In this document: positions 6,796-61,653 of the stretch, piece after piece
How positions within the stretch are numbered: the first letter of the stretch is position 1
How the letters are laid out: every line of letters begins with the position of its first letter
Assembly: GCF_006345805.1 (NCBI RefSeq)
Contig: NC_043006.1
Location: 10,602,001 to 10,666,000, forward strand
Direction of reading: 5' to 3'
Source of the DNA: Octopus sinensis
Taxonomy: Eukaryota
DNA: 64,000 nucleotides
Notes under the pieces: model-generated
What the model was told of the DNA's origin: nothing
Databases searched by the model: none
What the model saw: the letters and a program-made list of their open reading frames with translations, nothing else
Translations under genes and position numbers: made by a program

Positions 6796-6807
6796 GTCGT
6801 ACGTGTG

Positions 6808-6872
<65 letters not shown>

Positions 6873-7789: not shown

Positions 7790-7825
7790 ACGTACGTACG
7801 TACGTATATGTATAGTATATATATG

Positions 7826-7912
<87 letters not shown>

Positions 7913-8064
7913 GTATATATATATGTGTGTGTGTGCATATATATGTATGTACATGTATATATATATATATATTATATATATATATATATATAGATATATA
8001 TATATATATATGTATATATATGTATATAATATATATATATATATATATAGATATGTATATATAG

Positions 8065-8095
<31 letters not shown>

Positions 8096-8117
8096 GTATA
8101 TATATATTATCTATATA

Positions 8118-8162
<45 letters not shown>

Positions 8163-8209
8163 TATATATATGTATATATATATATATTATGTATATATAT
8201 GTATATATC

Positions 8210-8244
<35 letters not shown>

Positions 8245-8264
8245 GTATATATACTATATATATG

Positions 8265-8297
<33 letters not shown>

Positions 8298-8328
8298 GTA
8301 TATATATATATATATATGTATATATATG

Positions 8329-8359
<31 letters not shown>

Positions 8360-8388
8360 GTATATATATATATATATGTATATATATG

Positions 8389-8421
<33 letters not shown>

Positions 8422-8573
8422 GTATATATATATATATATGTATATATATGTATTATATAGATATATATATATGTATATATATGTATATATATTATATATA
8501 TATATGTATATATGTATATATTATATATATAATATGTATATGATATATATCTATATATATATGTATATGTATA

Positions 8574-8622
<49 letters not shown>

Positions 8623-8781
8623 ATATATATATGTATATATATGTATATATGTATATATATATATGTAATATATATATGATATATATATATATATATGTAT
8701 ATATATGTATATATATGTTATATATATATGTATATATATATATGTTATATATATATGTATATATATAATATGTATATATAG

Positions 8782-8835
<54 letters not shown>
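7790..8835. repeat. ~1-kb interrupted (TA)n/(TATATG)n microsatellite
   Basis: Directly visible; source of the YI-repeat ORFs. Confidence 0.95.
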
Positions 8836-8837
<2 letters not shown>

Positions 8838-9143
8838 ATTATATAAAAGGGCTTAGTAAAATAAATACTTTGCCACATACTGAACTCATTAGAAATAGTA
8901 GCTAAAAAAACTTTTCTAAACTATTTCTAATACTTAAAGAAATAACCTTCTCAAATAACCTTTGCATTTGATTTTTTAATGTCTTTACCCCCATACTTTC
9001 GTGAGTTGAGTTGAGCAAACACTATTTGAGAGAGATTTTCTTTAAGTATTAGAAATAGTTTTAAAAAAGTTTTTTTAGCTACTATTTCTAATGAGTTCAT
9101 TATGTGGCAAAGTAATTTATTTTACTAAGCCCTTTTATATAAT
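8838..9143. mobile_element. Foldback/MITE-like element with ~105-bp inverted arms
   Basis: 8838-8942 (attatataaaagggcttagtaaaa...cttaaagaaa) is the reverse complement of 9037-9143; loop about 95 bp. Confidence 0.75.
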
Positions 9144-9800
9144 GTAATAATTTGAATTCGCCTTAAATGGTCCCTTTACATACTGAATACTTGGTGAAAT
9201 TGATTAATAATTAATTAATTTTACCCTCAATTGTTGAAATTATAATTCATCTCTCTCTATTTAATGCTTCGGATTTTACCGAAAAAGCATAGTGTTTACT
9301 GATTTTAACCCACGCTGGTGGAAAGGGGGGAGCAGAAATTCTTCGCTTGCATTTTTTGGGTTTGCTGGCACTGTTAGTTTCGGGCAGATCTTCAGAAGCG
9401 ATAAGAAGCCGAAAGGGTATGCTCCCACTTTCAGTGTTTTCAAATCCAAACCAAGGAGTTCTGAGCTGATGATAGAAATGTCGAGTTGACTAATCTTGAA
9501 ACGTACGTTCTCAAATAACCCTTGCATTTGATTTTTAAATGTCTTTACCCCCATACTTTCGTGAGTTGAGTTGAGCAAACACTATTTGAGAGAGATTTTC
9601 TTTAAGTATTAGAAATAGTTTTAAAAAAAGTTTTTTTAGCTACTATTTCTAATGAGTTCAGTATGTGGCAAAGTAATTTACTTTACTAAGCCCTTTTATA
9701 TAATGTAATAATTTGAATTCGCCTTAAATGGTCCCTTTACATACTGAATACTTGGTGAAATTGATTAATAATTAATTAATTTTACCCTCAATTGTTGAAA
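8948..9800 (+). repeat. ~292-bp direct repeat pair (8948-9239 and 9508-9800) with 268-bp spacer
   Basis: Both copies run ttctcaaataacc...ttgttgaaa with only a few differences by eye. Confidence 0.9.
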
Positions 9801-9835
<35 letters not shown>

Positions 9836-9956
9836 TATATATCATGAATATTCGCATGCCTGTATGTGTGAACGCACACATAAATGAACACATACAACCG
9901 CGCACACACATGCACATATTTGTGTGAGTATATATACATATGTGCGTTTATGTGTG

Positions 9957-9991
<35 letters not shown>

Positions 9992-11059
9992 GTATATATA
10001 TGTATGTGTGTGTGTTTGTATGTATGCATATACGTATGTGTGCGTGTATGTGAGTGTAGGTGTGCGTGTGCGCGTATGTATATCACTTTATTAAATATTT
10101 TCGCCACCGAGAAAAGTTTGATTCGTTCAATTATAAATCCTACGAGTTCGCGAAGTTGTATTTTCGACGCCAAAGTGGCCGACCAATTTAAACCATTTAT
10201 ATACTGTTAACAATATAGAGGTTGACTATTGTTGTCTTCGGGGAGGAAAATTGCTGCATCAAAATTTCTATTTTATAATAAAGAGGCAATTAATGGGAGC
10301 TGAAAGAGATTATATGAACTGCGGTTTGTTCTAAAATTTAATTCTCAAAAATAATTAGTATCTAAGTATTAACTCAAGCAAGCGGTAAATCGTGAAGGTT
10401 AATGGTAGTATTTATTTTGACAGAAATATCGTCCTGAAATTCTTTGTTATCTACGCTATGTAAGATATATATACTGAGTATATTATGATATGGCATGGGA
10501 TAATGCATTTTAAGTATTATATCAAATAGTCACAGAAATTCGGTTCGAATCGAAGGTGGCACTTTGTTAGATATGGTTAGAGAATATAGAAAGATAAAGG
10601 AAGCATGTTAGACTTTTTGCTCCGATACTCAATGTTCTAACTTTCAGGATTGAATGTTGTTTTGTGATTAAGACGATCATTTTTTATGCATGTGGTTAGA
10701 GTTTCTAGCCAGCGACATTGCTTCGTGGCAGCGTAGTAGCTTAAAAACAGAGTTCTAACATACGTTCGCGTTGATAAATATTTGAGAATAAAATTTGGTA
10801 GACAACAACTGCACAGTAGTTTTAACTGAAAGAATTCATCAAGGTATGTTTTCGGTTCCACGTTTTTGTTTAGTGAAACATCTCTTACACTGTGGGACAG
10901 CGACCGTAAAAAGTTAATAATATAATAATCTGATATGTTGCCTACATGCAAGAAGCAAACGACAGGATGTTATACCTGGTTCTGAAGCATTATGGTACCG
11001 AAACATGCCCTCAGTTACAGAATAAAAAATGCTAATGATATATCTTCAGAAAACTGCTA

Positions 11060-11760
11060 GATGAAACAGGAACAGAAAATATGTCCCTAACTGCAAAGTA
11101 AAAGAAATAAAGCAAAAATCCAATACAGCAGCATCCAGTATACAGGGAAAAATTAAATTAGAGCAAACCCCACTACATGCTAAACACCTAAATAGAACCA
11201 GGACGCAGAACAGATCAGAATGTTATCCAATAGAGTCTATGATGCCCTTATCTCAAATCAGGGACCCAGATTAAGATCAAACCGATACACATCAGGGATT
11301 AGCATGCCATTGTCTCTAAACCACAAAACTTACTCGTGTGATGTTCTAAAACATGAAGCAAGAGAGATCATCCTGAGACAATATAGTTTTTGGATGCGGC
11401 CAACAGATAGGGTCAGGTTACTTACATCGAAAGGGCAGAGCAGTTTAGTACACATATACATATACTTGTCAATATACCATACAAAAAGAAGATGCGGAAT
11501 CATCAAACTATAAGTTGTGCAGAATACAGAAATTAAGATACTTTGTATATTTTGTGTTCAGACAGAACGGGGAGTTCAGGCTATCTGAGTAGAGAAATCA
11601 TATTGAAAAGACCTGTCATTTGATGGATGCAGGAGCCCCAACGGCCAAAACCACATCTTGGAAAACGCTTGGAAAATGGAGTAAATATAAGGAAATGAAG
11701 CTAGTAATCAGATGAATAGGGCATTTCAAGGCAATATCACCTGATATTATTATGATCAGG
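11060..11760 (+). mobile_element. Decayed 3' part of an R4/Dong-like LINE ORF (zinc-knuckle and restriction-like endonuclease region)
   Basis: Remnants PLHAKH (cf. PLHGKY), DNIVFGC (cf. DHIVSGC), VQTER.VQA (cf. IQTDR.IQA) and GKWSKYKEMKLVI (cf. EKLSKYKDLEIEI). Confidence 0.6.
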
Positions 11761-17833: not shown

Positions 17834-18412
17834 GTGTGTGTGGTTTCTCTTTATAGGTATCAATCTATTTATCTAACTATGTTATTCCCAATAGCAAAGA
17901 TACAACCATCTGATATCAGTTTATTTAACGCAAGTATCACACTGTTTCAGATAATACTACAATGATATTTTTCTTACTACTTCTTAATTTCATGTCTTAC
18001 TTCATAAAACTTCGAATTCTTTTACACTTGATTAAAAGATTATCGCCTTAGATTCCTTCATGTAATGCTCTTCGTATCTTTTCTTTGTTACACATTAAGT
18101 ATTGTCTGCTTTAATTTGTTGATGACCATTCATGCTTTATTTTATAGTTTGTTTTATGTTTTAATTGATACTTTGTTTCATACGTTTCGGTAAGATTCCA
18201 CAGTAAATCTTATCTATCCGTTTAATATTACATCTAAGGAGTTATAACCAACTGCATAAAGACCAAAACTGTACAGAAATACATTGTAAGATCAATTACT
18301 TTTTACAACATCTGAGTCTCTTTTCTTTTCATTAGAAGTAACTGGATAAATTTACTCTGTAATTTTGCCTCGGATATTGCAGTACAGTAACACTTAAAAA
18401 TCAACATAATCG

Positions 18413-18833
18413 GGGCAGGAGTGGCAGTGTGGTAAGAAGCTTGCTTACCAATCACATGGTTCCGGGTTCAGTCCCACTGCGTGGCAGTTTGGGCAAGTGT
18501 CTTCTACTATAGCCTCCGGCCGACCAAAGTATTGTGAGTGGATTTGGCAGACGGAAACTGAAAAGAAGCCCGATGTATATATGTATATGGATATATGTGT
18601 GTGTGTGTTTGTGTGTCTATGTTTGTCCCCCCCCCCCAACATCGCTTGACAACCGATGCTGGTGTGTGTATGTCCTCCGTAACTTAGCAGTTCGGCAAAT
18701 GATACTGATAGTATAAGTACTAGGCTTACAAAGAATAAGTCCTGGAGTCGATTTGCTCGACTAAAGGCGGTGCTTCAGCATGACCACAGTCAAATGACTG
18801 AACAAGTAAAAGAGTAAAAGAGAGTAAAGAGTA
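18413..18833 (+). mobile_element. SINE family B, full length
   Basis: gggcaggagtggcagtgtggtaag...ggttcagtcccactgc...tail gactgaacaagtaaaagagtaaaagag. Confidence 0.9.
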
Positions 18834-28850: not shown

Positions 28851-31094
28851 GATAATGTTTCTGAAGGTAATGTTATTTATATATATTTACATAATGTATA
28901 AATGGAATTGTTATTAGCACTGAATGTCGAGGCTCTCCCAGGAAAACATCTGGACGTCTGAAAAGATCTGGTAGTCCTGTCCCTGTTGGAGTAAAAACAA
29001 GTCTGAAGGCACAGTTTACATTCAGGTTCATCAAATTACCTTCTGGATCCAAGAAGATAATTCTTATTTTGAGACCCAGACCTCTCCGTGACAACAATAT
29101 AATTCTACTCAGCATTGCTTGATAACATTGCGTTAAAAAGGGAATACTGTAACTATTGTTATAGAAGGATATAACTGGAAAACAAAACGAAATAGTATTC
29201 GTAGTTGAAAAATCCAAGGCTACATGCGTGTCTCATCAGAGTTGACTTTCTGCTAAAAAGCAACAAGAAAATTTTTCATAGAATTATTTATAATGGAAAC
29301 TAGCAATATTCTTAGAGAAGTCACTATATAGGTTACAAGCTACAGCGATATCCTCAACAAAGCGGTTATATCCTATATCTGGTATAATAGATGTGTGGGT
29401 TGATCTCGTAGGATGATTAAATTATTCTGGTGTAAGAGTAGATGAACGGAACAATCATTGTAGCAGTTTTTTTAGTAACAGAATAGTCGTGATTAAGCAG
29501 ACATATTAGCAGAGGTGTTCCATACATGACTATCTCTTTTTACTAGGCTTAATGTATCTAAGATCATATTATCTCACATCACCTTCTCAACTGGTTAGAG
29601 AAAGATTTGGTTTGAATATTAGGAAGTCAACGACCACGTTGTTTCGAAATTACAAGTAACATGAGAGGATCGGTTTAATTAGGTGTACTCAAATCTGGCC
29701 AACAAACTGGCAAATTTTTAATTTAGAGAGACATCAATTATTTTTTTTCATTAAATGGAATTTTACTACAAAAAAAGAACATAAAAATTCGCGAATACAT
29801 GACTTCCTAGTGTAAATGCCACAAGAGTATACCACACTTGACATTAAATATAAAGGTGACAACACCGTTCTCAAGTTGCATACTAACACTGACATTCGAC
29901 CTCATATTTCGGCGGAGAGACTATTCATATAAATCGCCTCCAATCCGTAACTAGTACATGTAGTATCCACCCCAGTACGAACTAAAATCGAACAGTCCTC
30001 AGGCTCCGTCGTTCTGGACAGTGACTTATTTAAACATTACAGATGTTTTAGCTGATTGCATTGTAATTGTTCAGACGCTAGGGAAATAATTAAACGAGCA
30101 ACTTATACTCAAATATTTCTATTAGTTATGCTTCAATAAACCTAATCATATAGGTGCTAATATCTTGGCAAATTTTATCTAAAACTAAACGGCTTCCTTT
30201 TTTCTTGTGGGAGAGCAATATTTCCTATTTACACTGTATGAGAGTATCAATATCGCCAGCCAATTTTCATGTTGTAGGGTTCCTGTTACTGTTGATATTC
30301 ATGTAAGTTTTCTATTCCTTTGGTAATGGACAATTCCTAATGATAAACGTGTTTGTGTTTGATTTAATGTTCGGTAAAGATTAACTACTTCATTGACACG
30401 CTTCGCTATCACACCTTATTTCATCTCCGCGGCCATAAGAGAGTTCTGAAAACATGGTTCGTTTCAGTAGGTCTCAATGCTGTAAGATTAAATTATGCGG
30501 AAGTTGACCGCAACCTGACACCTTCATAACAGCAATAATTCCGACACCTTTCAGAATTGCATGCCATGTAAAATTTCGCTTTATGCATGGGGATTACACT
30601 CATATAAAATAACAAGCGAAGAGATTTAAAAGGATATATTGGAATTTTTCAATTATAAGTTACTGTCATGTGTCACAACGAAACATCTGTAATAATCATT
30701 GAATTACTTGCATATATCAGTTAATGCTATAATAATGGTATTGATTTCTCTTGGTTATTTTACGCTTCTAACTATTGGGAAGATGTAACCAGAGGAAACA
30801 CTATTATTCCGTCCCAAATAGCATTAAGAATTGATTATGAAGGATCCAAGATTTATTTTCTAATGGAAACTGAGTTGCTAATTTGATCCAATTGGGGTTG
30901 TATACTTGACTGGATATTTCAGGTGTTTTAGGAATATGTCTCGGCATTCGATCTCGTTCTGTGGAACAGTTGGGCATGGACAGTCTATCATATCTCCAGA
31001 GGCCCATATACTGTGACTATAATTTGTCAGACAAACTGTTTGGATGTCTTTTATGAACAAATACGTGTGTATTTGTACATGCGCGAGTGCGTGC

Positions 31095-34164: not shown

Positions 34165-35184
34165 GATATATATATATATATTATATATATATATATTTGC
34201 TTACGTTAAATGTTATTCGCTACTAGGCTATGTAGCATCTACAATTCGGTACCATTCATAACGATTGTTAACAATTCTATTAGATTTCCACGCCATTTAC
34301 TCAATGCATGATAAGCGTCCATGCATTTATTCATCCACGGCTACAAACATGAGTAAGCGAATTCTCCCGCGCATTCACATTTTCACGCCGGCCTACGCAA
34401 TCATATTCACAGCTGTAGAAGGTGCGTATTTGATTAATAATCCGCTCTATCTTCCTGCATGGTACAGGAAGTAAATACTTTATAAGGAGAGTCCTTAGTT
34501 GACAGGGTTATTTGCTGAATTTGTTCACAATGAGACAATATTATAGCCGGTGGTTAAAATGCAAATTTATATAGGTCAGGCTTATTGTGTTCTATCTTTC
34601 ATTATTGGATATCTTCTACGCTGTAGAGTAAAATATCACAAATCTCCAACCAGTATATAATTAGAAGCGACAGAACAGATTTATTATATCAAGATGTTTT
34701 CTCTTGAGTGAACAAAGGCAGTAATGATCTCATCGAAGCGGTAATAGTGTTGAGATTTTGGGAGGTTCTAAGCGTTGGTTTTTCACATTTTGGTCATATA
34801 CAGGCGCCCCGGGATCGATTTATTTGATACTGGTTATGCATTCTTGAAACAGTTTCAGGTCAACAACTGCTGGGAACAAATTAACTCTAAGGTTATAGAA
34901 GTTCTGGGGCAAAAGAAGGAGTCAGAATGACTAGTATCATGTTGAAGGGCTTATGCGTACGATGAAGGGCGGAAATGGAAACACAAGTGGGTTGGAGGAT
35001 ATTTAAGTGGCTATGGTATGTAATAAAATCACCTCCATAACAATTTTCCAAGTGACCTTTCTGTAGACGCAGTCCAAGTTATGTGCACGTAGTAGCAGCA
35101 TCGTCCCAGATATGGACCAAATCTTCTATTATGACCATCATTTGTGCTTTGTAAAGTATTAATAGCTGTTAGTGGTGGGAATAC

Positions 35185-35567
35185 TCTTTTATTTGTTTCA
35201 ATCATTTGACTGCGGCCATGCTGGAACACCGCTTTTTGTCGAGGAAATCGACCACAGGACTTATTCTTTGTAAGCCTAGTACTTACTCTATCGGTCTCTT
35301 TTGCCTAACCGCTTGGTTACGGGTACGTAAACACACCAGCGTCGGTTGTCAAGCGATGTTGGGGGGACAAGCAGACATACAAACACATACACATATATAC
35401 ATATACACGACGGGCTTCTTTCAGTTTCCGTCTACCAAATCCACTTACAAGGCTTTGGTCGGCCCGAGGCTATAGCAGAAGACACTTAGCCAAGGTACCA
35501 CGCAGTGGGACTGAACCCGGACTCATGTAGTTGGTCACCAAGCTATTTACCACACAGCCTCTCCTGC
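35185..35567 (-). mobile_element. SINE family B
   Basis: tcttttatttgtttcaatcatttgactgcggccatgctgg...accacacagcctctcctgcg. Confidence 0.9.
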
Positions 35568-36587
35568 GTTACGTTTATGAATTTGATTTGCAAGATTCTT
35601 GATGTGAAATCGTGTATTGAAGTAAATATTGTTTCATTTCGGGATGGTAATCGTTTTTTGTGAGGTAAACACGTACACTAAATTTTCGTTTTTCACTCGT
35701 TTACTATTGTTCTTATCTTATGTCCAGTGTATCCCTAAACAGAGAATCGACTAAACAGAACAGGAGGAGACACGTAGGATGGAAAAGTCACTGAAGGGGT
35801 CACAGATGTGTGATGAAAGATTTCTAGGTAAAGACCATAAGGTAAAATAAGAAGAATAACAAAAGAGCGAAGAACGAATATATAGTGCGTAATGTTTATT
35901 TTGCAGGAAAAATTATGACCATCCCGAAATGTAACAAAATAGTGGGAAGATTTTTCACAAATGAAGATAATTAGACAGCTTTTGTTATGCAGTCCGATGT
36001 ATTGAACTGACGTACATGTATCACAAAGGATGTTGGTTGATAACGAGTTCCAACATTTGTAGCTAAATTTCAGAGCTCTGGGTGAGTGTCATATGTACTG
36101 AGTGGAGGTGTGAGGTGCGATGATGTTTTTTGTGATATGAGTAATAATTTCATGTTCATGGAAGCTAAGATGCTCCTAGATGCGTTGCCAGTAATATACT
36201 TAATAATTTAATAACTTAAGTTAACACGACCATAGTTTGTACGTAAAGGGCTTCTTTCTGAAATTTGAGACAGTCACTACCTCCTTGTAACGAAGCTCAT
36301 GGGGAAATCTAAATCGTCTAGTATTCTAAGGTGAACTGGTCTGATTATTCTATTGACTTTTTTTACGAATAATTTTTATTTCACACCCGTTTCTGTTGTA
36401 TATAATTTCCCGTCTACTGTCACTATATAATTCTATATTAACTTCCTCTGCTGCGTTATTTTGCATGTTAAGAATATAAAGATCGGAAAGGTTTACAGTT
36501 TCATCAACATCTTTACTCAGCCAGTGGAAATTTTCTTGAAATACCGGATTGGTATTTTCTTGAAATTTTCTTGAAATTTTCTTGAAA

Positions 36588-37754: not shown

Positions 37755-37780
37755 AGATAGATAGATAGATAGATAGATAG

Positions 37781-37843
<63 letters not shown>

Positions 37844-40304: not shown

Positions 40305-40702
40305 CTCTTTTACTTGTTTCAGTCATTTGACTGCGGCCATGCTGGAGCACCACCTTTAGTCGAGCAAATCGACCCCGGGACTTATTCTTTGTAAGCCCAG
40401 TACTTATTCTATCGGTCTCTTTTGCCGAACCGCTAAGTGACGGGGACGTAAACACACCAGCATCGGTTGTCAAGCAATGCTAGGGGGACAAACACAGACA
40501 CACAAACATATACACACACACTTATATATATATATACATATATACGACAGGCTTCTTTCAGTTTCCGTCTACCAAATCCACTCACAAGGCATTGGTCAGT
40601 CCGGGGCTATAGCAGAAGACACTTGCCCAAGATGCCACGCAGTGGGACTGAACCCGGAACCATGTGGTTGGTTAGTAAGCTACTTACCACACAGCCACTC
40701 CT
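40305..40702 (-). mobile_element. SINE family B, young full-length copy
   Basis: Nearly identical to 5255-5672. Confidence 0.9.
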
Positions 40703-41134
40703 ATCTGTATAAATAAAAAGTGTTGCATTTACTGGTAGTGTCATAGTATAGGGTTTCTTGTGCCACATATTTTACACAAATATATGAATTATGAAAAATG
40801 TTGTCAGGTCTACATTCGTGTAATTAATGTATCTCTTCGTATCTCCTCTCTTATTATCTTCTATCATGTATTTGTTTTAGTCATTGGACTGTAGCCATGC
40901 CGAAGCACAGTCTTAAAGAAATTTAGTCGAAAAAATATCTACCCAGTAGTTACTTGTTAAATCTGATATTTATGTTTTAGGTCATTTTTACCGAACATCT
41001 AATGTATGGAGATATAAACAAACTAAACCTGATTAACAAGCGATGTGGAATGAGGACAAGCGCAGATACAAAGACACACGCACACATACACAGATAGGCA
41101 GCTAGATAGATAGGTAGGTAGGTAGGTAGGTAGG

Positions 41135-41186
<52 letters not shown>

Positions 41187-41201
41187 AAAATAGATAGATA
41201 A

Positions 41202-41503
41202 GTTTCTTTATTGGCCACACAGGGCTGCACACAGATGGGACAAGTTACAAGGTAGAGCTTTTCTTTTGGGGGATGAAAGAAAGGGGGTGGCGTAGGTTTC
41301 CGATCAAGAGGGATCGTAAAAGTGAAGAAAACAAAAAAAAAAAGAAAAAGAAAAAATGAAAAAATAAATAGAATAAAAAATAAAAAGAATAAAAGAAAAA
41401 AAAGAAAGGGAAAAGGAACAAAAGAAAAGAGAAATGAAAAAAGAAGAAAAAGGGGAAAAAAAGGGGAAGAGGAAAAAGAAAAAGAACGATCAATAGGGAT
41501 CGT
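41202..41503 (-). mobile_element. Tx1-like LINE copy U1 (3' UTR only)
   Basis: Minus strand ends gtggccaataaagaaac+(tcta)n; 5'-truncated at acgatccctattgatcg. Confidence 0.85.
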
Positions 41504-41531
41504 GTAGATAGATAGGTAGGTAGATAAATAA

Positions 41532-41622
<91 letters not shown>

Positions 41623-41623
41623 T

Positions 41624-42708
41624 GTTTCTTTATTAGCCACACAGGGCTGCAAACAGACAGGACAAATTACAAGGTAGAGCTTTTCTTTTGGGGATAAAAA
41701 AGGGGGTTTGGTTTTCGATCAAAAGGGATCGTAAAAGGAAAGAAAGAGGAAAAAAAAAGGGGGGGGATAAAAAAAGGGAAAAGGAAAAAAAAAACGATCA
41801 ATAGGATCGTTATCACAGAAATGTCAATATAAAGTGTAAAGGGGAGGACAGGTGAGGTTTAACCGTGGAAAGAAAAGCCTATGGAAAAGACCACGGTAAC
41901 CTCGGTCTTTTTTTTTTTTTTTTTTTTTTTTGCAAATAAGCAACTCTCTGTTTTCGATTTCTGGGTTCATAGGACTATGCTCAAGGTGGCTTCGTCATTC
42001 ATACGTGCCATTCTTGCTACATTCACCCATCTTTTTTTAAAACATTCGCTAGACAAAACTTGCCTCTCTACTCTCACTTTCCTTTTCAAGTGGTACTTGA
42101 AGAAGTTGATGAGAGATTGACCAGAGAGGAAAGTGTTTGTCTCCAATCCTTTCAGACGCGTCCACCAGATACATTCTTTCGCCATAGCCACAAGGATGAT
42201 GAAAATAGCTCTTCCTTCCGTTTGAAGGAAGGAGGCGTGACAATATTGACGATAGACTCAGCTGATAAACCGACTCGTCCCACACGTGACAGCAGTTGTT
42301 CGACATAAGCCCACAGGTCGGAAATTGTTGGACACTGAACGAGTGCGTGCAGAACGGTTTCGTCGCTCTGACCGCATCTCGGGCAGGTCGGCCCCGTGTT
42401 TCTCGAGCCGTGTCTGTAGAGCTTATCCCGAACGGGTAGCGCTTCTCGGTAGCACTGCCAGGCCAGGGATCTCTGGAAGTTGTCCATGGGCCCTGGCCCG
42501 AAAGTCGTCCCGAACAGGCGGGTCAGGTACTCCTCGTCGACGTTCAGGTTCGCCCCGAGCTCGTCGTCGTACCTCCCCTCCACTAAACCCCTATAGAATG
42601 CTTTGGTTGTGTTGAAGTCACTTAAGGTCGACCCAGGACGGCAGAGTTGCTTGAGAGCAACGCGACACTCGCGGTGCCATTCGCCCTTCCTCGGCCTCTT
42701 TTTGATCC

Positions 42709-42709
<1 letters not shown>
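41624..42709 (-). mobile_element. Tx1-like LINE copy U2 (ORF2 C-terminus 41967-42709 plus 3' UTR)
   Basis: AWQCYREALPVRDKL...CPRCGQSDETVLHALVQCP..LW is a zf-RVT-type zinc motif; AKECIWWTR and FKKRW follow; stop TGA at 41967-41969; one frameshift near 42220. Confidence 0.9.
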
Positions 42710-42762
<53 letters not shown>

Positions 42763-42786
42763 ATAGATAGAAAAATAGATAGATAA

Positions 42787-43082
42787 GTTTCTTTATTGGC
42801 CACACAGGGCTGCACACAGATGGGACAAGTACAAGGTAGAGCTTTTCTTTTGGGGGATGAAAAAAAGGGGGTGGCGTAGGTTTCCGATCAAGAGGGATCG
42901 TAAAAGTGAAGAAACAAAAAAAAAAAGAAAAAGAAAAAAAATGAAAAAATAAATAGAATAAAAAATAAAAAGAATAAAAGAAAAAAAGAAGGGAAAAGGA
43001 ACAAAAGAAAGAGAAATGAAAAAAGAAGAAAAAGGGGAAAAAAAGGGAAGAGGAAAAAAAAAGAACGATCAATAGGGATCGT
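42787..43082 (-). mobile_element. Tx1-like LINE copy U3 (duplicate of U1 including junctions)
   Basis: Same 3' flank (gatagaaaaatagatagataag) and same 5' junction (gggatcgtgtagatagataggtagg) as U1. Confidence 0.85.
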
Positions 43083-43110
43083 GTAGATAGATAGGTAGGT
43101 AGATAAATAA

Positions 43111-43203
<93 letters not shown>

Positions 43204-43204
43204 T

Positions 43205-43665
43205 GTTTCTTTATTAGCCACACAGGGCTGCAAACAGACAGGACAAATTACAAGGTAGAGCTTTTCTTTTGGGGATAAAAAAGGGGGTTTGGTTTTCGAT
43301 CAAAAGGGATCGTAAAAGGAAAGAAAGAGGAAAAAAAAAGGGGGGGGATAAAAAAAGGGAAAAGGAAAAAAAAAACGATCAATAGGGATCGTTATCACAG
43401 AAATGTCAATATAAAGTGTAAAGGGGAGGACAGGTGAGGTTTAACCGTGGAAAGAAAAGCCTATGGAAAAGACCACGGTAACCTCGGTCTTTTTTTTTTT
43501 TACAAATAAGCAACTCTCTGTATTAATTTTTACGGTTCATAGGATCATAGTCAAGGTGGCTTCGTCATTCATACGTGCCATCCTTACTACAATCACCCAT
43601 CTTTTTTTAAAACATTCACTAGACAAAACTTGCCTCTCTACTCTCACTTTCCTCTTCAAGTGATA
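43205..43665 (-). mobile_element. Tx1-like LINE copy U4 (3' UTR plus last ~40 codons)
   Basis: 3' UTR nearly identical to U2; ORF end matches the U5 variant; truncated at caagtgata|tggatag. Confidence 0.85.
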
Positions 43666-43667
43666 TG

Positions 43668-43718
<51 letters not shown>

Positions 43719-43728
43719 TGATAGATAT

Positions 43729-44955
43729 GTTTCTTTATTAGCCAGACAGGGCTGCACACAGATAGAACAAATTACAAGGTAGAGTTTTTCTTTTGAAGGT
43801 AAAAAAAAAAAGGGGGTGTTCGATCAAAAGGGATCGTAAAAGGAGAGAAAGAGGACAAAAAAAAAAGGTGGGTTAAAAAAAAAGGGGGAGAGGAAAAAAA
43901 ATTGATCAATAGGGATCGTTATCACAGAAATGTCAATATGAAGTGTAAGGGGAGGACAGGTGAGGTTTACCCCGTGAAAGAAAAGCCTACGGAAAAGACC
44001 ACGGTAACCTCGGTCAATGAAGTCACATGTTATATTTCTTTCTTTTATTTATTTTTTTTTGCAAATAAGCAACTCTCTGTATTAATTTTTATGGTTCATA
44101 GAATCATAGTCAAGGTGGCTTCGTCATTCATACGTGCCATCCTTGCTACATTCACCCATCTTTTTTTAAAACATTCACTAGACAAAACTTGCCTCTACTC
44201 TACTTCTCACTTCCTCCTCAAGTGATACTTGAAGAAGTTGATGAGATATGACCGAGAGGAAAGTGTTTGTCTCTAATCCTTTCAGGCGCGTCCACCATAT
44301 CATTCTTTCGCCATACCAACAAGTATGATAAAAATAGCTCTTCCTTCCCGTTTGAAGGAAGGAGGCGTGACGATATTAACGATAGACTCAGCTGATAAAC
44401 CGACACGTCCCACACGTGACAGCAGTCGTTCGACATAAGCCCACAGGTGGGAAATTGCTGGGCACTGCACGATTGCGTGCAGAGCGGTTTCGTCGCTCTG
44501 CCCGCATCTCGGGCAGGTCGGCCCCGTGTTTCTCGGGCCATGCCTATAGAGCTTATCCCGAACGGGTAGCGCTTCTCGGTAGCACCGCCAGGCCAGGTAT
44601 CTCTGGAAGTTGTCCATAGGTCCCGGGCCGAAAGTCGTTTGAAACAGGTGGGTCAGGTATTCCTCGTCGACGCCCAGGTTTGCCCCGAGCTCGTCGTCGT
44701 ACCTCCACTCCACTAATCCCCTATAGAATGCTTTGGTTGTGTTGAAGTCACACAAGGTCGACCCGGGACGGCAGAGTTGCTTGAGAGCAACGCGACACTC
44801 GCGGTGCCATTCGCCCTTCCTCGGCCTCTTTTTGATCACGACTGCAGTTCGGTCATGGAGACAAGTTGCGGGAATGCGTGCCTCACAACGGCGACCACAC
44901 CTGTTCACCGTCGTCTACATAGAGCCGAGATGTCGCAGTCTCAGCGTGTCTGCGC

Positions 44956-44957
<2 letters not shown>
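43729..44957 (-). mobile_element. Tx1-like LINE copy U5
   Basis: ORF 44300-44908 contains KKRPRKGEWHRECR...CPRCGQSDETALHAIVQCP...; 3' end aataaagaaacata(tcta)n. Confidence 0.9.
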
Positions 44958-45019
<62 letters not shown>

Positions 45020-45068
45020 GTAGGTAGGTAGGTAGGTAGATAGATATAGATAGATAGATAGATGGTAG

Positions 45069-45100
<32 letters not shown>

Positions 45101-45119
45101 AATAGATAGATGTTTCTTT

Positions 45120-45159
45120 CTATCTATCTATCTATCTATCTATCTACCTACCTACCTAC

Positions 45160-45190
<31 letters not shown>

Positions 45191-45211
45191 CCTACCTACC
45201 TACCTACCTAC

Positions 45212-45270
<59 letters not shown>
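45120..45270. repeat. (TATC)n/(TACC)n block inverted relative to the surrounding (GATA)n
   Basis: Orientation switches at 45120, directly after gtttcttt, and back at 45270 (tcta|gata). Confidence 0.9.
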
Positions 45271-45279
45271 GATAGATAG

Positions 45280-45325
<46 letters not shown>

Positions 45326-45538
45326 TATGGTAGGTAGGTAGGTAGGTAGTAGGTAGGTAGGTAGGTAGGTAGGTAGGTAGGTAGGTAATAGATAGATAGG
45401 TAGGTAGGTAGGTAGGTAGGTAGGTAGGTAGGTAGGTAGGTAGGTAGGTAGGTAGGTAGGTAGGTAGGTAGATAGATAGATAGATATAGATAGGTAGGTA
45501 GGTAGGTAGGTAGGTAGGTAGGTAGGTAGGTAGGTAGC

Positions 45539-45585
<47 letters not shown>

Positions 45586-45638
45586 TAGATAGTAGGTAGG
45601 TAGGTAGGTAGGTAGGTAGGTAGGTGTAGGTAGGTAGG

Positions 45639-45681
<43 letters not shown>

Positions 45682-46962
45682 GTTTCTTATTAGCCACACA
45701 GGGCTGCACACAGATAGAACAAATTACAAGGTAGAGCTTTTCTTTTGAAGGTATTAAAAAAAAAAAAAAAAAAAGGAAGGGGGAGGTTCGATCAAAAGGA
45801 TCGTAAAAGGAGAGAAAGAGAAAGACAAAATAAGGGGGTTAAAAAAAAAAAAAAAAGGGGGGGGAGAGGAAAAAAAAAAATATCAATAGGGATCGTTATC
45901 TACACAGAATGTCAATATGAAGTGTAAAGGGAGGACAGGTGAGGTTTACCCGTGGAAAGAAAAGCCTGCGGAAAAGACCACGGTAACCTCGGTCAATGAA
46001 GTCAATTTTAGTTTATATTTCTTTTTTTTTTTTTTTTTTTTTGGCAAATAAGCAACTCTCTGTTTTCGATTTCTGGTTCATAGGACTATGCTCAAGGTGG
46101 CTTCGTCATTCATACGTGCCATTCTTGCTACATTCACCCATCTTTTTTTAAAACATTCGCTAGACAAAACTTGCCTCTCTACTCTCACTTTCCTTTTCAA
46201 GTGGTACTTGAAGAAGTTGATGAGAGATTGACCAGAGAGGAAAGTGTTTGTCTCCAATCCTTCAGACGCGTCCACCAGATACATTCTTTCGCCATAGCCA
46301 CAAGGATGATGAAAATAGCTCTTCCTTCCCGTTTGAAGGAAGGAGGCGTGACAATATTGACGATAGACTCAGCTGATAACCGACTCGTCCCAAACGTGAC
46401 AGCAGTGGTTCGACATAAGCCCACAGGTCGGAAATTGTTGGACACTGAACGAGTGCGTGCAGAACGGTTTCGTCGCTCTGACCGCATCTCGGGCAGGTCG
46501 GACCCTTGTTTCTCGAGCCGTGTCGTAGAGCTTATCCCGAACGGGTAGCGCTTCTCGGTAGCACTGCCAGGCCAGGGATCTCTGGAAGTTGTCCATGGGC
46601 CTGGCCCGAAAGTCGTCCCGAAAGGCGGGTCAGGTACTCCTCGTCGACGTCCAGGTTCGCCCCGAGCTCGTCGTCGTACCTCCCCTCCACTAACCCCTAT
46701 AGAATGCTTTGGTTGTGTTGAAGTCACTTAAGGTCGAACCCAGGACGGCAGAGTTGCTTGAGAGCAACGCGACACTCGCGGTGCCATTCGCCCTTCCTCG
46801 GCCTCTTTTTGATCCACGACTGCAGTTCGGTCATGGGACGAGCTGCGGGAAACGTGCCCACAAACGGCGACCACACCTGTTCACCGTCGTCTACATAGAG
46901 CCAGAGATGTCGCAGTCTCAGCGCGTGTCTGCGCATCATCAACCACGGCCATGCCCAGCCAT
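45682..46962 (-). mobile_element. Tx1-like LINE copy U6 (longest copy; many 1-bp indels)
   Basis: Collinear with U2 and U5; ORF end identical to the U2 variant (NDEATLSIVL*); 5' junction cagccat|agatag. Confidence 0.9.
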
Positions 46963-47729
46963 AGATAGATAGACGTCAGGCTTCCATAGGGTTTCTGTCA
47001 ATCAATTTCAATCGCAAATCATTGGTCAACCCGGTGCGTCACAGTGAGAGCGAACCCAAAACTGATGGATGCAAAGCGAGCTTCTTAGCCACAGGGCCAG
47101 GCCGTCTGAAATCTGACAAAGATTATCTCGGAGCCTGGCAACATTAGCAGGTCTTGTGACCTATATGTATAAAGAAAAATTGCTGGCGTTCTTCCATTAT
47201 TGTTTACTCTGCTACCTTATTAATAAATGTTTGACATCGAAATACTTTAATAAAAAAACCGTTTTAATGAATGGATTGTGTGCACGCATTATGACAATTA
47301 AATATCTCTTATCAAACGTATTATGACACTTAAACTAGAGGGGTCTTGCTCCTTTCTGTAAGTACAAACAGATTGTTTCTGTAGCAATTCATAATTTTGA
47401 TAATACAGATGAACAACCGCTAGCATGTATTTAAGCCTAATATGAAAAGATAAAATGATGAAATAGCGCATATGTCTTTGTTATTGCTACACAGATAATT
47501 GAGGTCATATCTTACTGGACAATATAAAATGTAATTGAAAATTGCAACCTTTTGACTGACCGTATAATTATTCCCAAGTGTTCTTAATTGAGTAGATTGA
47601 TGCAGTGTCAGATACAAGATATATGGCTGCGTCACTTAGGCGAGATATATAAAAAAAATATGATACAAATGAAGGGGAAATAGCCAGAAAGATGGATGCA
47701 TTATTGATATATATATATAATATTATATA

Positions 47730-52019: not shown

Positions 52020-52107
52020 ATATTATATATCTATATCTATCTATCTATCTATCTATCTACTATCTATCTATCTATCTATCTCATCTATCTATCTATCTAT
52101 CTATCTA

Positions 52108-52175
<68 letters not shown>

Positions 52176-55801: not shown

Positions 55802-56309
55802 TCTATATATATAAAACGGTAGTTGTGTGAGTGTCTGTCCCCTTCGATTTAGATTCCTAACTACTCCCACATTTTGCGGAGCAGTTTAACCAAATTCGGG
55901 TATCTTATAGTCGTGATTCATATCGAGCCCGTCTGAGTATTAACGCGCGTCTACGATGAGTCAACGATTTTTAAAATAATTTAACATCATTTTTTATTCC
56001 ATTTTAATGCATAATTTTTCGTGTGTCGATGGCGGCGGAGTTGGCGTCCATGGTCACACCTGCACCTGTTTGCTTCTCCCCTTCTTCCCTCCCTCGTGAA
56101 GCTGTGGGGAAGGATTGTAAGGAAATCAACGTCGTAAAGTGTTGTCAAGGAGACAGCGTTCTTTTAGAACAACGACTTCATGGCTTGAAGACACCAAAAC
56201 AGAAATGGCTAAGAAAGCCCGATTGGCATCTATAAGGGAAGTACTCTCTAAAAATGCTTATATAGTTATTTCCCTTACAAAACCGAGCAACGCCGGGCGA
56301 TACTGCTAG
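55802..56309 (+). mobile_element. Non-autonomous Helitron
   Basis: Starts TC (tctatatatataaaa) after A55801, ends CTAG before T56310, has a subterminal GC hairpin ccgagcaacgccggg, and no TSD. Confidence 0.85.
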
Positions 56310-56324
56310 TATATATATATATAT

Positions 56325-56695
56325 ACTCTTTTACTTGTTTCAGTCATTTGACTGTGGCCATGCTAGAGCACCGCTTTTAGTCGAGCAAATCGACCCCAGG
56401 ACTTATTCTTTGTAAGCCTAAGTTACGGGGACGCAAACACACCAGCATCGGTTGTCAAGCGATGTTGGGGGGTACAAACACAGACACACAAACATATACA
56501 CACACACACATGCATATATATTATACATATATAATACGACAGGCTTCTTTCAGTTTCCGTCTACCAAATCCACTCACAATGCTTTGGTTGGCTCGAGACT
56601 TTAGTAGAAGATACTTGCCCAAGGTGCAGGCAGTGGGACTGAACCGGAACCATGTGGTTTGTAAGCAGCTACTTACCACACCGCCACTCCTACGC
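56325..56695 (-). mobile_element. SINE family B with a small internal deletion
   Basis: tactcttttacttgtttcagtcatttgactg...ccgccactcctacgcc. Confidence 0.9.
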
Positions 56696-56731
56696 CTACT
56701 ATATATATAGTTTCTGTTCTCTTTAATTATA

Positions 56732-56816
<85 letters not shown>

Positions 56817-56820
<4 letters not shown>

Positions 56821-57229
56821 GAGTGGCTGTGTGGGAAGTAGCTTGGTAAACAACCACATGGTTCCTGGTTCAGTCCCACTGCGCTGCATCTTGGGCAAGT
56901 ATAGCCCCGGGCCGACCAATGCTTGTGAGTGGATTTGGTAGACAGAAACTGATAGAAGTCTGTCGTATATATGTATTAATATATATATATATATATATAA
57001 TATATAATATGTATGTGTGTTTGTGTGTCTGTTTGTCCCCCTAGCATTGCTTGACAACCGAGCTGGTGTGTTTACGTTCCCGTTACTTAGCGGTTCGGCA
57101 AAAAAGAGACTGATAGAATAAGTACTGGGCTTACAAAGAATAAGTCCCGGGGTCGATTTGCTCGACTAAAGGCGGTGCTCCAGCATGGCCGCAGTCAAAT
57201 GACTTAAACAGTAAAAGAGTAAAAGAGTA
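56817..57229 (+). mobile_element. SINE family B
   Basis: caggagtggctgtgtgggaagtagc...gtaaaagagtaaaagag. Confidence 0.9.
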
Positions 57230-61489: not shown

Positions 61490-61600
61490 TAGATAGATAG
61501 ATAGATAAATACATACACAGGTAAATAAAGAAACTGACAGACAACTAGATAGATAGATAGGTAGATAGATAGGTAGATAGATAGATAGATATATAGATAG

Positions 61601-61653
<53 letters not shown>

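What the first reader, a model, noticed from the sequence alone, without database searches (positions are those of the whole stretch)
41091..46973. Stack of six Tx1-like LINE copies inside one (GATA)n microsatellite: a putative GATA-repeat-targeting retrotransposon that renews its own target
Seen: six copies (U1-U6, about 300-1280 bp), all on the minus strand, share one 3' end (aataa[a]gaaac followed by (TCTA)n), have staggered 5' truncations, and every 5' and 3' junction abuts (TCTA/TACC)n. The ORF end carries a zf-RVT-type CxxC...H...C motif of L1/Tx1 ORF2. No copy occurs outside GATA repeats in this window. Established: Tx1-clade families with APE endonucleases can be site-specific (Kibi and Koshi in TC/TTC microsatellites, Keno in U2 snRNA genes, Dewa in tRNA arrays), and telomere elements such as SART/TRAS insert into simple repeats. 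Inference: this family cuts (TCTA)n/(GATA)n, and its (TCTA)n end recreates the target, so insertions pile up and the microsatellite grows into a multi-kb retroelement array. I do not know of a described GATA-tetranucleotide-specific Tx1 family in cephalopods, but cannot search. U3 is a duplicate of U1, so independent insertions number at most about five.
Basis: partly seen in the sequence, partly recalled or inferred. Interest (0 to 1): 0.9.

Follow-up and report, generated by a model that had tools for sequence, protein, structure and literature searches.

The report
LINE copies stacked in GATA microsatellite
Six broken copies of an octopus L1/Tx1-type jumping gene, each ending in a (TCTA)n repeat, are piled head-to-tail inside what was once a short simple repeat within a SINE; this fits a retrotransposon that prefers to land in the repeat it carries as its own tail, a known kind of behaviour with a new repeat motif.

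Summary
Six 5'-truncated minus-strand copies (about 300-1280 bp) share one 3' end, GGC[C/T]AATAA(A)GAAAC, followed by N and (TATC)n. Every 5' end abuts (TATC/TACC)n, and the window holds no other copy. The coding part carries Pfam zf-RVT. A near-full-length Argonauta relative has APE, RVT_1 and zf-RVT, and its best solved-structure match is human L1 ORF2p. This places the element in the L1 group. Tx1 placement is likely but was not tested.

New here: the two flanks of the 5.9-kb array join into one copy of a ~370-bp composite SINE. Six paralogues in the window carry only 25-60 bp of TA/TG simple repeat at that point. The array is therefore a real insertion complex in a pre-existing simple-repeat site.

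There are five distinct 5' truncation points. U3 plus the 3' part of U4 is a recent copy of U1 plus the 3' part of U2, and the units are mosaics. I count 3-5 independent insertions.

Three other (GATA)n loci in the window are empty. Sister lineages have other tails or none. No further genomic copies could be fetched, so genome-wide GATA specificity and endonuclease specificity remain untested.

Verdict: probably a new member of the known microsatellite-targeting LINEs. Interest is moderate.

The parts
40840..41092 (-). 3' body of the composite SINE that hosts the array (left flank on the + strand)
   Evidence: Aligns with the body of six other SINE copies in the window once joined to the right flank.
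41093..41201 (-). Tail of U1: (TATC)n with a (TACC)6 block. This is the outer 3' boundary of the array.
41202..41503 (-). U1: the last ~300 nt of the LINE 3' UTR, with an expanded pyrimidine-rich stretch. Its 3' UTR differs from the other units by 17-22%.
41504..41623 (-). Tail of U2, which is also the 5' flank of U1. On the + strand it reads gta(GATA)2(GGTA)2(GATA)aataaata(GATA)22.
41624..42709 (-). U2: C-terminal ~185 codons of ORF2 (zf-RVT) plus the 3' UTR. Its ORF is 99% identical to U6, and its 3' UTR is identical to that of U4.
42710..42786 (-). Tail of U3, a copy of the proximal part of the U1 tail with the same gaaaaata interruption.
42787..43082 (-). U3, a recent duplicate of U1.
43083..43204 (-). 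Tail of U4, a copy of the U2 tail with the same interruptions.
43205..43665 (-). U4, a mosaic. Its 3' UTR is identical to that of U2. Its 5' ~170 nt (the ORF end) is 10% from U2 and 7% from U5. The 5' junction has TATC microhomology.
43666..43728 (-). Tail of U5, about 15 TATC units.
43729..44957 (-). U5: the last ~230 codons of ORF2 plus the 3' UTR. It holds an open 202-aa frame at 44300-44908, with zf-RVT at about 44441-44602.
44958..45681 (-). Tail of U6: about 720 bp of (TATC)n/(TACC)n blocks. It includes an inverted block at 45115-45270 that is preceded by gtttcttt.
45682..46962 (-). U6, the longest copy: the last ~294 codons of ORF2 with several 1-bp frameshifts, plus the 3' UTR.
46963..46973 (-). 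Residual target repeat, TCTATCTATCT on the minus strand, between the 5' end of U6 and the SINE head.
46974..47115 (-). Head of the host composite SINE (right flank on the + strand), ending ...GGAAGCCTGACG.

Best explanation
A cephalopod L1-group (probably Tx1-clade) LINE family has a conserved 3' end, ...GCAGCCCTGTGTGGCTAATAAAGAAAC, and a templated (UAUC)n = (TCTA)n tail. It integrated repeatedly, by target-primed reverse transcription, into one (TCTA)n/(GATA)n tract. The first hit was in the internal simple repeat of an old composite SINE. Each 5'-truncated insertion left a fresh (TCTA)n tail, so later copies could land in the tails of earlier ones, always in the same orientation. The proposed priming step is that the nicked (GATA)n strand pairs with the (UAUC)n end of the RNA. 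Local DNA exchange then reshaped the array: one ~0.97-kb block (tail-U1-tail-3' UTR) was duplicated or converted. Shown: the anatomy, the L1-group identity, the paralogous empty site, the distinct 5' ends and the mosaicism. Inferred: the preference for (TCTA)n itself, its cause (endonuclease sequence specificity and/or tail-target pairing), and the order of events.
For: Six copies with one 3' end and five distinct 5' ends, all abutting (TATC)n. The 3' junction is in the same microsatellite phase in all six, and all copies have one orientation. The 5' junctions show 1-4 nt microhomologies (TATC for U4, AT for U5), as is typical of 5'-truncated LINE insertions. The flanks rejoin into one SINE whose six paralogues have only 25-60 bp of simple repeat at that point, and an 11-nt TCTA remnant sits at the distal junction. 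Units differ by 0-22% and belong to at least four sequence types, so they are not copies of one insertion. The ~330-nt 3' UTR is conserved in an 80%-identical relative from another sample, so it belongs to the LINE and is not a separate element. zf-RVT is present in the window. APE, RVT_1 and zf-RVT occur in the Argonauta relative, and L1 ORF2p is the top PDB hit at E 1e-51, against 6.5e-21 for R2. The Argonauta relative also sits at the end of a same-orientation stack of elements that share its 3' end, next to (ATT)17, which matches its own (ATT)n tail. Microsatellite-specific Tx1-clade families are established: Kibi (TC)n, Koshi (TTC)n and crocodilian Tx1 (TTCC)n/(TTTC)n (PMC4494074, PMC3812793).
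Against: All the evidence for targeting comes from one locus, and no other genomic copy of this family could be retrieved. Three other (GATA)n tracts in the window carry no copy. In the host SINE's paralogues the site is (TATA)/(TGTG), not (TCTA), so the original target may have held only about three TCTA units. The mosaic units and the duplicated block show that non-retrotransposition processes also built the array. The 5' flank phases are not uniform, so there is no sign of a sequence-specific second-strand cut. The frequent 1-bp indels between copies look like those of a noisy long-read assembly, so details of the array could be wrong.
Confidence: 0.6

Rival explanations
1. One or two retrotransposition events produced a concatemer. 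During a single target-primed reverse transcription, the reverse transcriptase repeatedly jumped from an internal position on one LINE RNA to the (UAUC)n end of another. This would give head-to-tail 5'-truncated units separated by tails, with no preference for GATA targets.
For: Every internal 5' junction is by construction a junction to a tail. The units are mosaics with a switch point at an internal homopolymer: U2 has a U6-type ORF with a U4-type 3' UTR, and U4 has a U5-like ORF end with a U2-type 3' UTR. This is what copy-choice between templates would give. The ORFs of U2 and U6 differ by only 1%.
Against: The inter-unit tails are long (15-30 units, and ~180 units for U6) and carry interruptions that look evolved. 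The 3' UTR of U1 is 17-22% from the others, which suggests different ages. The exact repeat of the tail-U1-tail-3' UTR block needs a DNA-level duplication anyway. The distal junction still retains TCTA repeats at a simple-repeat site.
Confidence: 0.15
2. The (TCTA)n is only a tail, added or extended by reverse-transcriptase slippage as in other stringent-type LINEs. The copies cluster here because of a regional effect, such as a TE-rich permissive region, together with local unequal crossing-over and gene conversion between microsatellite-flanked units.
For: Sister lineages keep the same 3' end with other tails or none: O. sinensis has none and its flanks are not GATA, and Argonauta has (ATT)n. 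The tail is therefore a lineage-specific appendage. A 0.97-kb duplicated or converted block and the mosaicism show active local recombination. Other GATA tracts are empty.
Against: Five different 5' truncation points each fall in (TATC)n, and unequal exchange between flanking microsatellites reproduces whole units rather than creating new truncation points. There is no copy anywhere else in the 64 kb. All copies share one orientation. The whole complex lies exactly at a simple-repeat position of a SINE.
Confidence: 0.15
3. Assembly artefact. Part of the array, such as the U1-U2 / U3-U4 repeat, the inverted block or the ~720-bp tail, is a false duplication, a haplotype join or a chimeric-read palindrome in a noisy long-read assembly.
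For: The two blocks differ mainly by length differences (18 gap openings in 977 aligned columns), with no substitutions in the shared 3' UTR. U6 has 28 gap openings over 1171 aligned columns against U2, and many are single-base deletions. An inverted microsatellite block lies at 45115-45270.
Against: The outer flanks are colinear parts of one SINE, and U2, U4, U5 and U6 have different 5' ends and sequences. The core observation therefore survives even if U3/U4 or the inverted block were artefacts.
Confidence: 0.1

Closest known systems
Kibi, Koshi and the crocodilian Tx1 group: Tx1-clade LINEs inserted in (TC)n, (TTC)n and (TTCC)n/(TTTC)n microsatellites (Kojima & Fujiwara 2004, as cited in PMC4494074 and PMC3812793)
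   Same: APE-type, L1-group elements found with the same simple repeat at both junctions. The target is a microsatellite, and copies are usually 5'-truncated.
   Different: The repeat here is the tetranucleotide TCTA/GATA, and the host is a cephalopod. Specificity rests on one locus here, whereas those families were defined from many flanks (more than 20% of flanks is the criterion in PMC4494074). Clade placement by RT tree was not done.
Waldo (ACAY)n and Mino (AC)n of the R1 clade, and Dong (TAA)n (PMC3812793)
   Same: Non-LTR retrotransposons described as microsatellite-specific. The mechanism is thought to be endonuclease specificity but is not well understood.
   Different: They belong to other LINE clades and lack the C-terminal zf-RVT of the L1 group. 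Their repeat motifs differ.
LINEs and partner SINEs with a conserved 3' end and a microsatellite-like 3' repeat, for example the RTE-related retroposons of Nishiyama & Ohshima 2018 (PMC6007223). From my own knowledge, eel UnaL2 with (TGTAA)n is a further example.
   Same: A conserved 3' end is followed by short tandem repeats. The 3' end is shared with SINEs. PMC6007223 proposes that the 3' repeats of the RNA template influence the choice of priming or cleavage site.
   Different: Those families are dispersed and are not reported to stack inside their own repeat. They belong to other clades (RTE, L2).
Head-to-tail stacks formed by insertion into the tail of an earlier copy: Zepp of Chlorella (an L1-clade element, named in PMC5203782), and L1/Alu insertions into A-rich tails. 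The stacking behaviour is recalled from my own knowledge and was not checked here.
   Same: The tail that each insertion brings is itself the preferred target, so 5'-truncated copies pile up in one orientation.
   Different: The tail and target there is poly(A). Here it is a (TCTA)n microsatellite.

Membership tests
L1 group of non-LTR retrotransposons (L1/Tx1) | C-terminal Cys/His zinc-binding motif after the RT (Pfam zf-RVT) | tested here: met
   U5 scores E 7.8e-9 (36.5 bits, cut-off 27.5) and U2 scores E 2e-8. The motif reads CPRCGQSDET[AV]LHA[IL]VQC.
L1 group of non-LTR retrotransposons (L1/Tx1) | N-terminal APE-type endonuclease and an RT domain in ORF2 | tested here: inconclusive
   Every window copy lacks these regions because of 5' truncation. 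They are present in relatives. Argonauta L003 has Exo_endo_phos (E 5e-11), RVT_1 (2e-18) and zf-RVT. P0012, 65% identical to the window's C-terminus, has RVT_1 and zf-RVT. The best PDB match of the Argonauta ORF2 is human L1 ORF2p, E 1e-51 across APE and RT, against 6.5e-21 for R2.
Tx1 clade | RT-domain phylogeny places the element with Tx1 rather than L1 sensu stricto | not tested
   None of the protein searches returned a labelled Tx1 reference. The only support is indirect. An RT-based survey lists a Tx1 clade, but no separate L1 clade, among the 11 LINE clades it names for bivalves, and repeat annotation finds L1-Tx1 in 35 mollusc species (PMC10294476). O. vulgaris has 13 recently active L1-Tx1 families (PMC13282606).
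Tx1 clade | ORF1 of the RRM / zinc-knuckle type, not the mammalian coiled-coil type (PMC5203782) | tested here: inconclusive
   The Argonauta ORF1 contains CHRCGLPGHIRSGC, but Pfam zf-CCHC scores only E 0.062, below the cut-off. No ORF1 of the window's own family lies in the window.
Target-specific (microsatellite-specific) LINE | One type of sequence in a large share of the flanks of the family's copies (more than 20% in PMC4494074) | tested here: inconclusive
   All five distinct 5' junctions and all six 3' junctions lie in (TATC)n, and the complex sits at a SINE's simple-repeat position. All of them are in one locus, however, and no other genomic copy could be fetched.
Target-specific (microsatellite-specific) LINE | Endonuclease that nicks the target repeat specifically | not testable with these tools
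   This needs a copy of the family that bears the endonuclease, and an in vitro nicking assay.
LINE with a specific ('stringent') 3' end shared with partner SINEs | 3'-terminal sequence conserved among related LINEs and shared with SINEs | tested here: met
   TGTGG[C/G]TAATAAAGAAA ends the window LINE, the O. sinensis LINE (L002) and, with one extra A, the Argonauta LINE (L003). It also ends five ~205-bp SINE copies in the window and more than 20 repeat copies in L003, several of which read as SINEs.

The most novel reading that the evidence does not exclude
An octopod Tx1-like lineage has evolved true specificity for (GATA)n/(TCTA)n, by endonuclease recognition combined with pairing of a templated (UAUC)n tail. 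Because every insertion regenerates the target, it turns short microsatellites, including those inside SINEs, into multi-kb retroelement arrays. It would be the first GATA-tetranucleotide-specific LINE, and the first microsatellite-specific LINE described in cephalopods.
Probability: 0.4. Interest if true: 0.6.

Novelty: new member of a known kind. Interest (0 to 1): 0.45.

Why it matters
If the preference is confirmed genome-wide, it adds a new target motif and a new phylum to the short list of microsatellite-specific LINEs: (TC)n, (TTC)n, (TTCC)n/(TTTC)n, (AC)n, (ACAY)n and (TAA)n. It would also give a natural system in which tail-target pairing and endonuclease specificity can be separated. 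That is possible because sister lineages share the same conserved 3' end but carry no tail or an (ATT)n tail. It would further explain one way in which tetranucleotide repeats in octopus genomes grow into kilobase-scale arrays. Finally, it links this LINE group to an abundant octopus SINE family through a shared 3' end. For genome annotation, such arrays are easily mistaken for satellites or for misassemblies.

Tried and rejected
(1) I considered whether the ~330-nt 3' part after the internal poly(A) is a separate tailed element. I rejected this because the same module follows the stop codon, without the poly(A), in the 80%-identical relative L001.

(2) I tried to obtain more genomic copies. 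A protein-pattern scan of metagenome contigs, an exact 3'-end DNA scan of metagenome contigs and a protein-pattern scan of bacterial/archaeal genome contigs for contaminant DNA all returned nothing. Look-ups of P0011 and P0004 were not on record. The Logan, ENA and JGI contigs of relatives (L001, L004-L016) are short and stop before the 3' end, or belong to distant families. A search with the ORF1 part of P0011 gave one O. bimaculoides protein with no contig.

(3) I looked for named Tx1 or L1 references for an RT tree. None was returned, and a supplement look-up found nothing held as text.

(4) I tested the idea of a uniform second-strand cleavage phase at the 5' flanks. The phases differ, so I dropped it.

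(5) I asked whether the left flank belongs to a repeat that typically carries a (GATA)n tail. Only one weak paralogue was found by direct blastn. The question was resolved differently, through the composite SINE alignment.

(6) Twin priming as the origin of the inverted block 45115-45270 does not fit, because the inverted part is microsatellite and not upstream LINE sequence.

(7) AATAAAGAAAC at 61524-61534 inside another GATA tract might be a seventh mini-copy. It is ambiguous. It lies in phase with degenerate TAAA/GAAA repeat units, and it is on the strand that the pairing model does not predict.

(8) ARAGORN finds no tRNA in the window. 'tRNA-like SINE head' is therefore my reading of the sequence, not a tool result.

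Full report
**1. What is there**

Between 41093 and 46973 the + strand is built from (GATA)n/(GGTA)n tracts that alternate with six stretches of complex sequence. blastn of the longest stretch against the whole window hits only these six places. A multiple alignment puts them in one register. Read on the minus strand, every unit ends ...GCAGCCCTGTGTGGC[C/T]AATAAAGAAAC (U6 lacks one A). One A or T follows, and then TATC repeats in the same phase in all six. The 11-mer AATAAAGAAAC is expected 0.09 times in the window and occurs six times. Five occurrences are these 3' ends, and U6 carries the variant lacking one A.

The refined unit coordinates are:
- U1 41202-41503
- U2 41624-42709
- U3 42787-43082
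- U4 43205-43665
- U5 43729-44955(-57)
- U6 45682-46960(-62)

The 5' ends fall at five different positions of the alignment (U1 = U3), and each one abuts (TATC)n or (TACC)n. Small microhomologies are visible at these junctions, TATC for U4 and AT for U5.

**2. What the element is**

The coding part is the C-terminus of a LINE ORF2. U5 keeps an open 202-codon frame. U5 and U2 both match Pfam zf-RVT above the curated cut-off. A ~294-aa conceptual C-terminus finds only cephalopod-type fragments:
- an ENA contig at 80% identity (P0001);
- JGI, ENA and NCBI fragments at 58-68%;
- Argonauta hians at 58%;
- Octopus sinensis at 46%;
- a 37-residue stretch, 97% identical, at the start of an O. bimaculoides gene model (P0011).

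The Argonauta locus (L003) holds a near-full-length relative. It has an ORF1 with a CCHC-like knuckle and an ORF2 with Exo_endo_phos, RVT_1 and zf-RVT. That ORF2 matches human L1 ORF2p over endonuclease plus RT at E 1e-51, far better than R2 proteins at 6.5e-21. P0012, which is 65% identical to the window's C-terminus, also has RVT_1 and zf-RVT. The family therefore belongs to the L1 group.

I could not test Tx1 against L1 placement, because no labelled Tx1 reference was returned. The literature makes Tx1 likely. An RT-based survey lists a Tx1 clade, and no separate L1 clade, among the LINE clades it names for bivalves (PMC10294476). O. vulgaris has 13 recently active L1-Tx1 families (PMC13282606).

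The ~330-nt region downstream of the stop codon is the element's own 3' UTR. The same module follows the stop codon in the 80% relative L001, without the internal poly(A) run seen in the window copies.

**3. The 3' end is conserved, but the tail is lineage-specific**

The motif TGTGG[C/G]TAATAAAGAAA ends several elements:
- the O. sinensis relative, which has no repeat tail, flanks that are not GATA, and a short target-site duplication;
- the Argonauta relative (with one extra A), which has a short (ATT)n tail;
- five copies of a ~205-bp SINE in the window, with no repeat tail and unique flanks;
- more than 20 repeat copies in the 20-kb Argonauta locus, several of which read as SINEs.

The group thus appears to have a specific 3' end that it shares with partner SINEs. 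The (TCTA)n tail is a feature of the window's lineage only.

In Argonauta the full-length element sits at the end of a same-orientation stack: a 3' fragment, then a 3' fragment with (ATT)17, then three SINE copies, then the LINE. Each begins right after the previous 3' end. The three SINE copies could be a tandem duplication, so this is only suggestive that stacking at tails is a property of the group.

**4. The empty site**

The right flank (47115 to 46974, read on the minus strand) ends ...GGAAGCCTGACG. It resembles the head of a SINE that is present about eight more times in the window. In those copies the head is followed by a TA/TG simple repeat and then by a ~190-nt body.

Joining the two flanks of the array and aligning them with six other copies shows that the left flank (41092 to 40840, minus strand) is that body. 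The whole 5.9-kb array therefore sits exactly at the internal simple repeat of one old SINE copy. The paralogues have only 25-60 bp at that point. An 11-nt remnant, TCTATCTATCT, remains between the SINE head and the 5' end of U6.

This has two consequences. The array is a real insertion complex, not a join of unrelated DNA. And the first insertion went into a simple-repeat site that contained at least about three TCTA units.

In the paralogues the repeat is (TATA)(TGTG), not (TCTA). Whether a long (TCTA)n tract pre-existed is therefore unknown.

**5. How many insertions**

One colinear block, 41124-42092, matches 42709-43662. It comprises part of the U1 tail, U1, the U2 tail and the 3' 470 nt of U2. 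The copy even includes the microsatellite interruptions gaaaaata and gta(GATA)2(GGTA)2(GATA)aataaata.

Substitution divergences, excluding gaps:

| Comparison | Region | Divergence |
|---|---|---|
| U2 vs U4 | 3' UTR | 0% |
| U2 vs U4 | U4's coding stub | 10% |
| U4 vs U5 | U4's coding stub | 7% |
| U2 vs U6 | ORF | 1% |
| U2 vs U6 | 3' UTR | 10-13% |
| U5 vs U2 or U6 | ORF | ~8% |
| U1 vs all except its duplicate U3 | 3' UTR | 17-22% |

Two ORF types and two 3' UTR types therefore occur in all four combinations, and the switch lies at an internal homopolymer. This could arise by DNA gene conversion or unequal exchange, or by template switching during reverse transcription.

Counting distinct 5' ends gives five events. 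Counting sequence lineages gives at least three or four. Simple tandem duplication of one insertion is excluded. A purely stepwise history is not proven.

**6. Mechanism**

All units share one orientation and one 3' junction phase. On the element strand the repeat on both sides of every unit is the same, (TATC)n.

The simplest model is target-primed reverse transcription. The nicked (GATA)n strand pairs with the (UAUC)n 3' end of the RNA. Each insertion adds a new (TCTA)n tract, which is a further target.

Whether the endonuclease itself recognises the repeat cannot be told from sequence. The 5' flank phases vary, so nothing points to a sequence-specific second-strand cut.

Three other (GATA)n loci in the window are unoccupied: 37755-37842, 52034-52109 and 61492-61641. 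This is compatible with a low-copy or old family, but it gives no support.

**7. Comparison with what is known**

Microsatellite-specific APE-type LINEs are established:
- Kibi (TC)n, Koshi (TTC)n and crocodilian Tx1 (TTCC)n/(TTTC)n in the Tx1 clade;
- Waldo (ACAY)n and Mino (AC)n in the R1 clade;
- Dong (TAA)n (PMC4494074, PMC3812793).

Full-text searches found no LINE reported as specific for GATA/TCTA repeats and no target analysis of cephalopod L1-Tx1 families. The idea that a tail recreates the target is familiar from poly(A)-tailed elements. I state that from my own knowledge.

If real, this is a new member of a known kind: a new motif and a new host group.

**8. Caveats**

Frequent 1-bp indels between near-identical units suggest an imperfectly polished long-read assembly. 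The irregular partial repeat units in the tails point the same way. The inverted microsatellite block at 45115-45270, preceded by gtttcttt (the last 8 nt of the element), is unexplained and could be an artefact or a rearrangement.

All evidence for targeting comes from one locus. Attempts to fetch further genomic copies failed.

**9. Verdict**

| Explanation | Probability |
|---|---|
| A (TCTA)n-tailed L1/Tx1-type LINE that re-inserts into (TCTA)n, followed by local recombination | ~0.6 |
| Single-event concatemer formed by template jumping | ~0.15 |
| Tail only, with regional clustering and recombination | ~0.15 |
| Partial assembly artefact | ~0.1 |

Interest is moderate (0.45).

Noticed in passing
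window 40330-40715, 5290-5682, 35170-35575, 56300-56702 (minus strand); 18407-18800, 56809-57200 (plus strand); host copy 40840-41092 plus 46974-47115: A ~370-bp composite SINE: a head with tRNA-like boxes (my reading; ARAGORN finds no tRNA), an internal TA/TG microsatellite of 25-60 bp, and a ~190-nt body. The LINE array sits in the internal microsatellite of one old, diverged copy.
   Followed up: yes
window, 3' ends at 36816 (+), 55237 (+), 54602 (-), 39607 (-), 22373 (-): A ~205-bp SINE family ends ...TTTGTCCCCTCTATGTTTAGCCCCTTGTGGGTAATAAAGAAAT. Its last ~43 nt closely match the 3' end of the O. sinensis L1/Tx1-type LINE in L002 (...TTGTCCCCCTCTATGTTTGGGCCCTTGTGGCTAATAAAGAAAT). This suggests that the LINE group mobilises an abundant octopus SINE. 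These copies have no microsatellite tail and have unique flanks.
   Followed up: partly
L003 (Argonauta hians) 4680-5360 and throughout its 20.8 kb: A same-orientation stack lies directly upstream of a near-full-length LINE (5360-11190): a 3' fragment, a 3' fragment with (ATT)17, and three SINE copies. More than 20 repeat copies ending GGCCCTTGTGGCTAATAGAGAAAT(CTAT) occur in 20 kb.
   Followed up: partly
window 45111-45270: Inside the long tail of U6, gtttcttt (the last 8 nt of the element on the + strand) is followed by a 156-bp block of the microsatellite in inverted orientation, (TATC)6(TACC)4(TATC)7(TACC)6(TATC)14. It could be a rearrangement, an aberrant insertion or an assembly artefact. 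Twin priming does not fit.
   Followed up: partly
window 61524-61534 (+), inside the (GATA)n tract 61492-61641: This is the only other AATAAAGAAAC in the window (0.09 expected by chance), and it lies inside a second GATA microsatellite. It is in phase with degenerate TAAA/GAAA units and is on the strand that the pairing model does not predict. It could be a chance product of repeat decay or a minimal remnant.
   Followed up: partly
3' ends listed (window, L002, L003): A possible 4-bp hairpin lies just before AAUAAAGAAA: window LINE AGCC/GGCT, Argonauta and O. sinensis GGCC/GGCT with a G-U pair, and octopus SINE GCCC/GGGT. One position changes on both sides (G-C to C-G). I read this by eye and did not test it statistically.
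   Followed up: no
window 28912-29157 (-): A fragment 38% identical to residues 74-162 of the Argonauta ORF2 endonuclease-bearing frame (tblastn E 2.5e-10). It is a different, decayed LINE, unrelated to the array.
   Followed up: no
P0011 (O. bimaculoides A0A0L8GCS6), matching window 42075-42185: This gene model starts with 37 residues that are 97% identical to the C-terminal part of this LINE's ORF2, and it continues into a LINE ORF1-like sequence. It is probably a chimeric model that spans two adjacent LINE copies. It shows that the family, or a very close one, exists in O. bimaculoides.
   Followed up: partly
P0004: A 466-aa protein of this cephalopod LINE group is deposited as 'MAG: zinc-binding domain-containing protein [Herbaspirillum sp.]'. 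This most likely reflects host-DNA contamination of a metagenome bin.
   Followed up: no
window 41124-43662 and U6: Near-identical copies differ mainly by length: 18 gap openings in 977 columns between the two blocks, and 28 in 1171 between U2 and U6. This looks like an unpolished long-read assembly, so frameshifts in these copies should not be read as mutations without the reads.
   Followed up: partly
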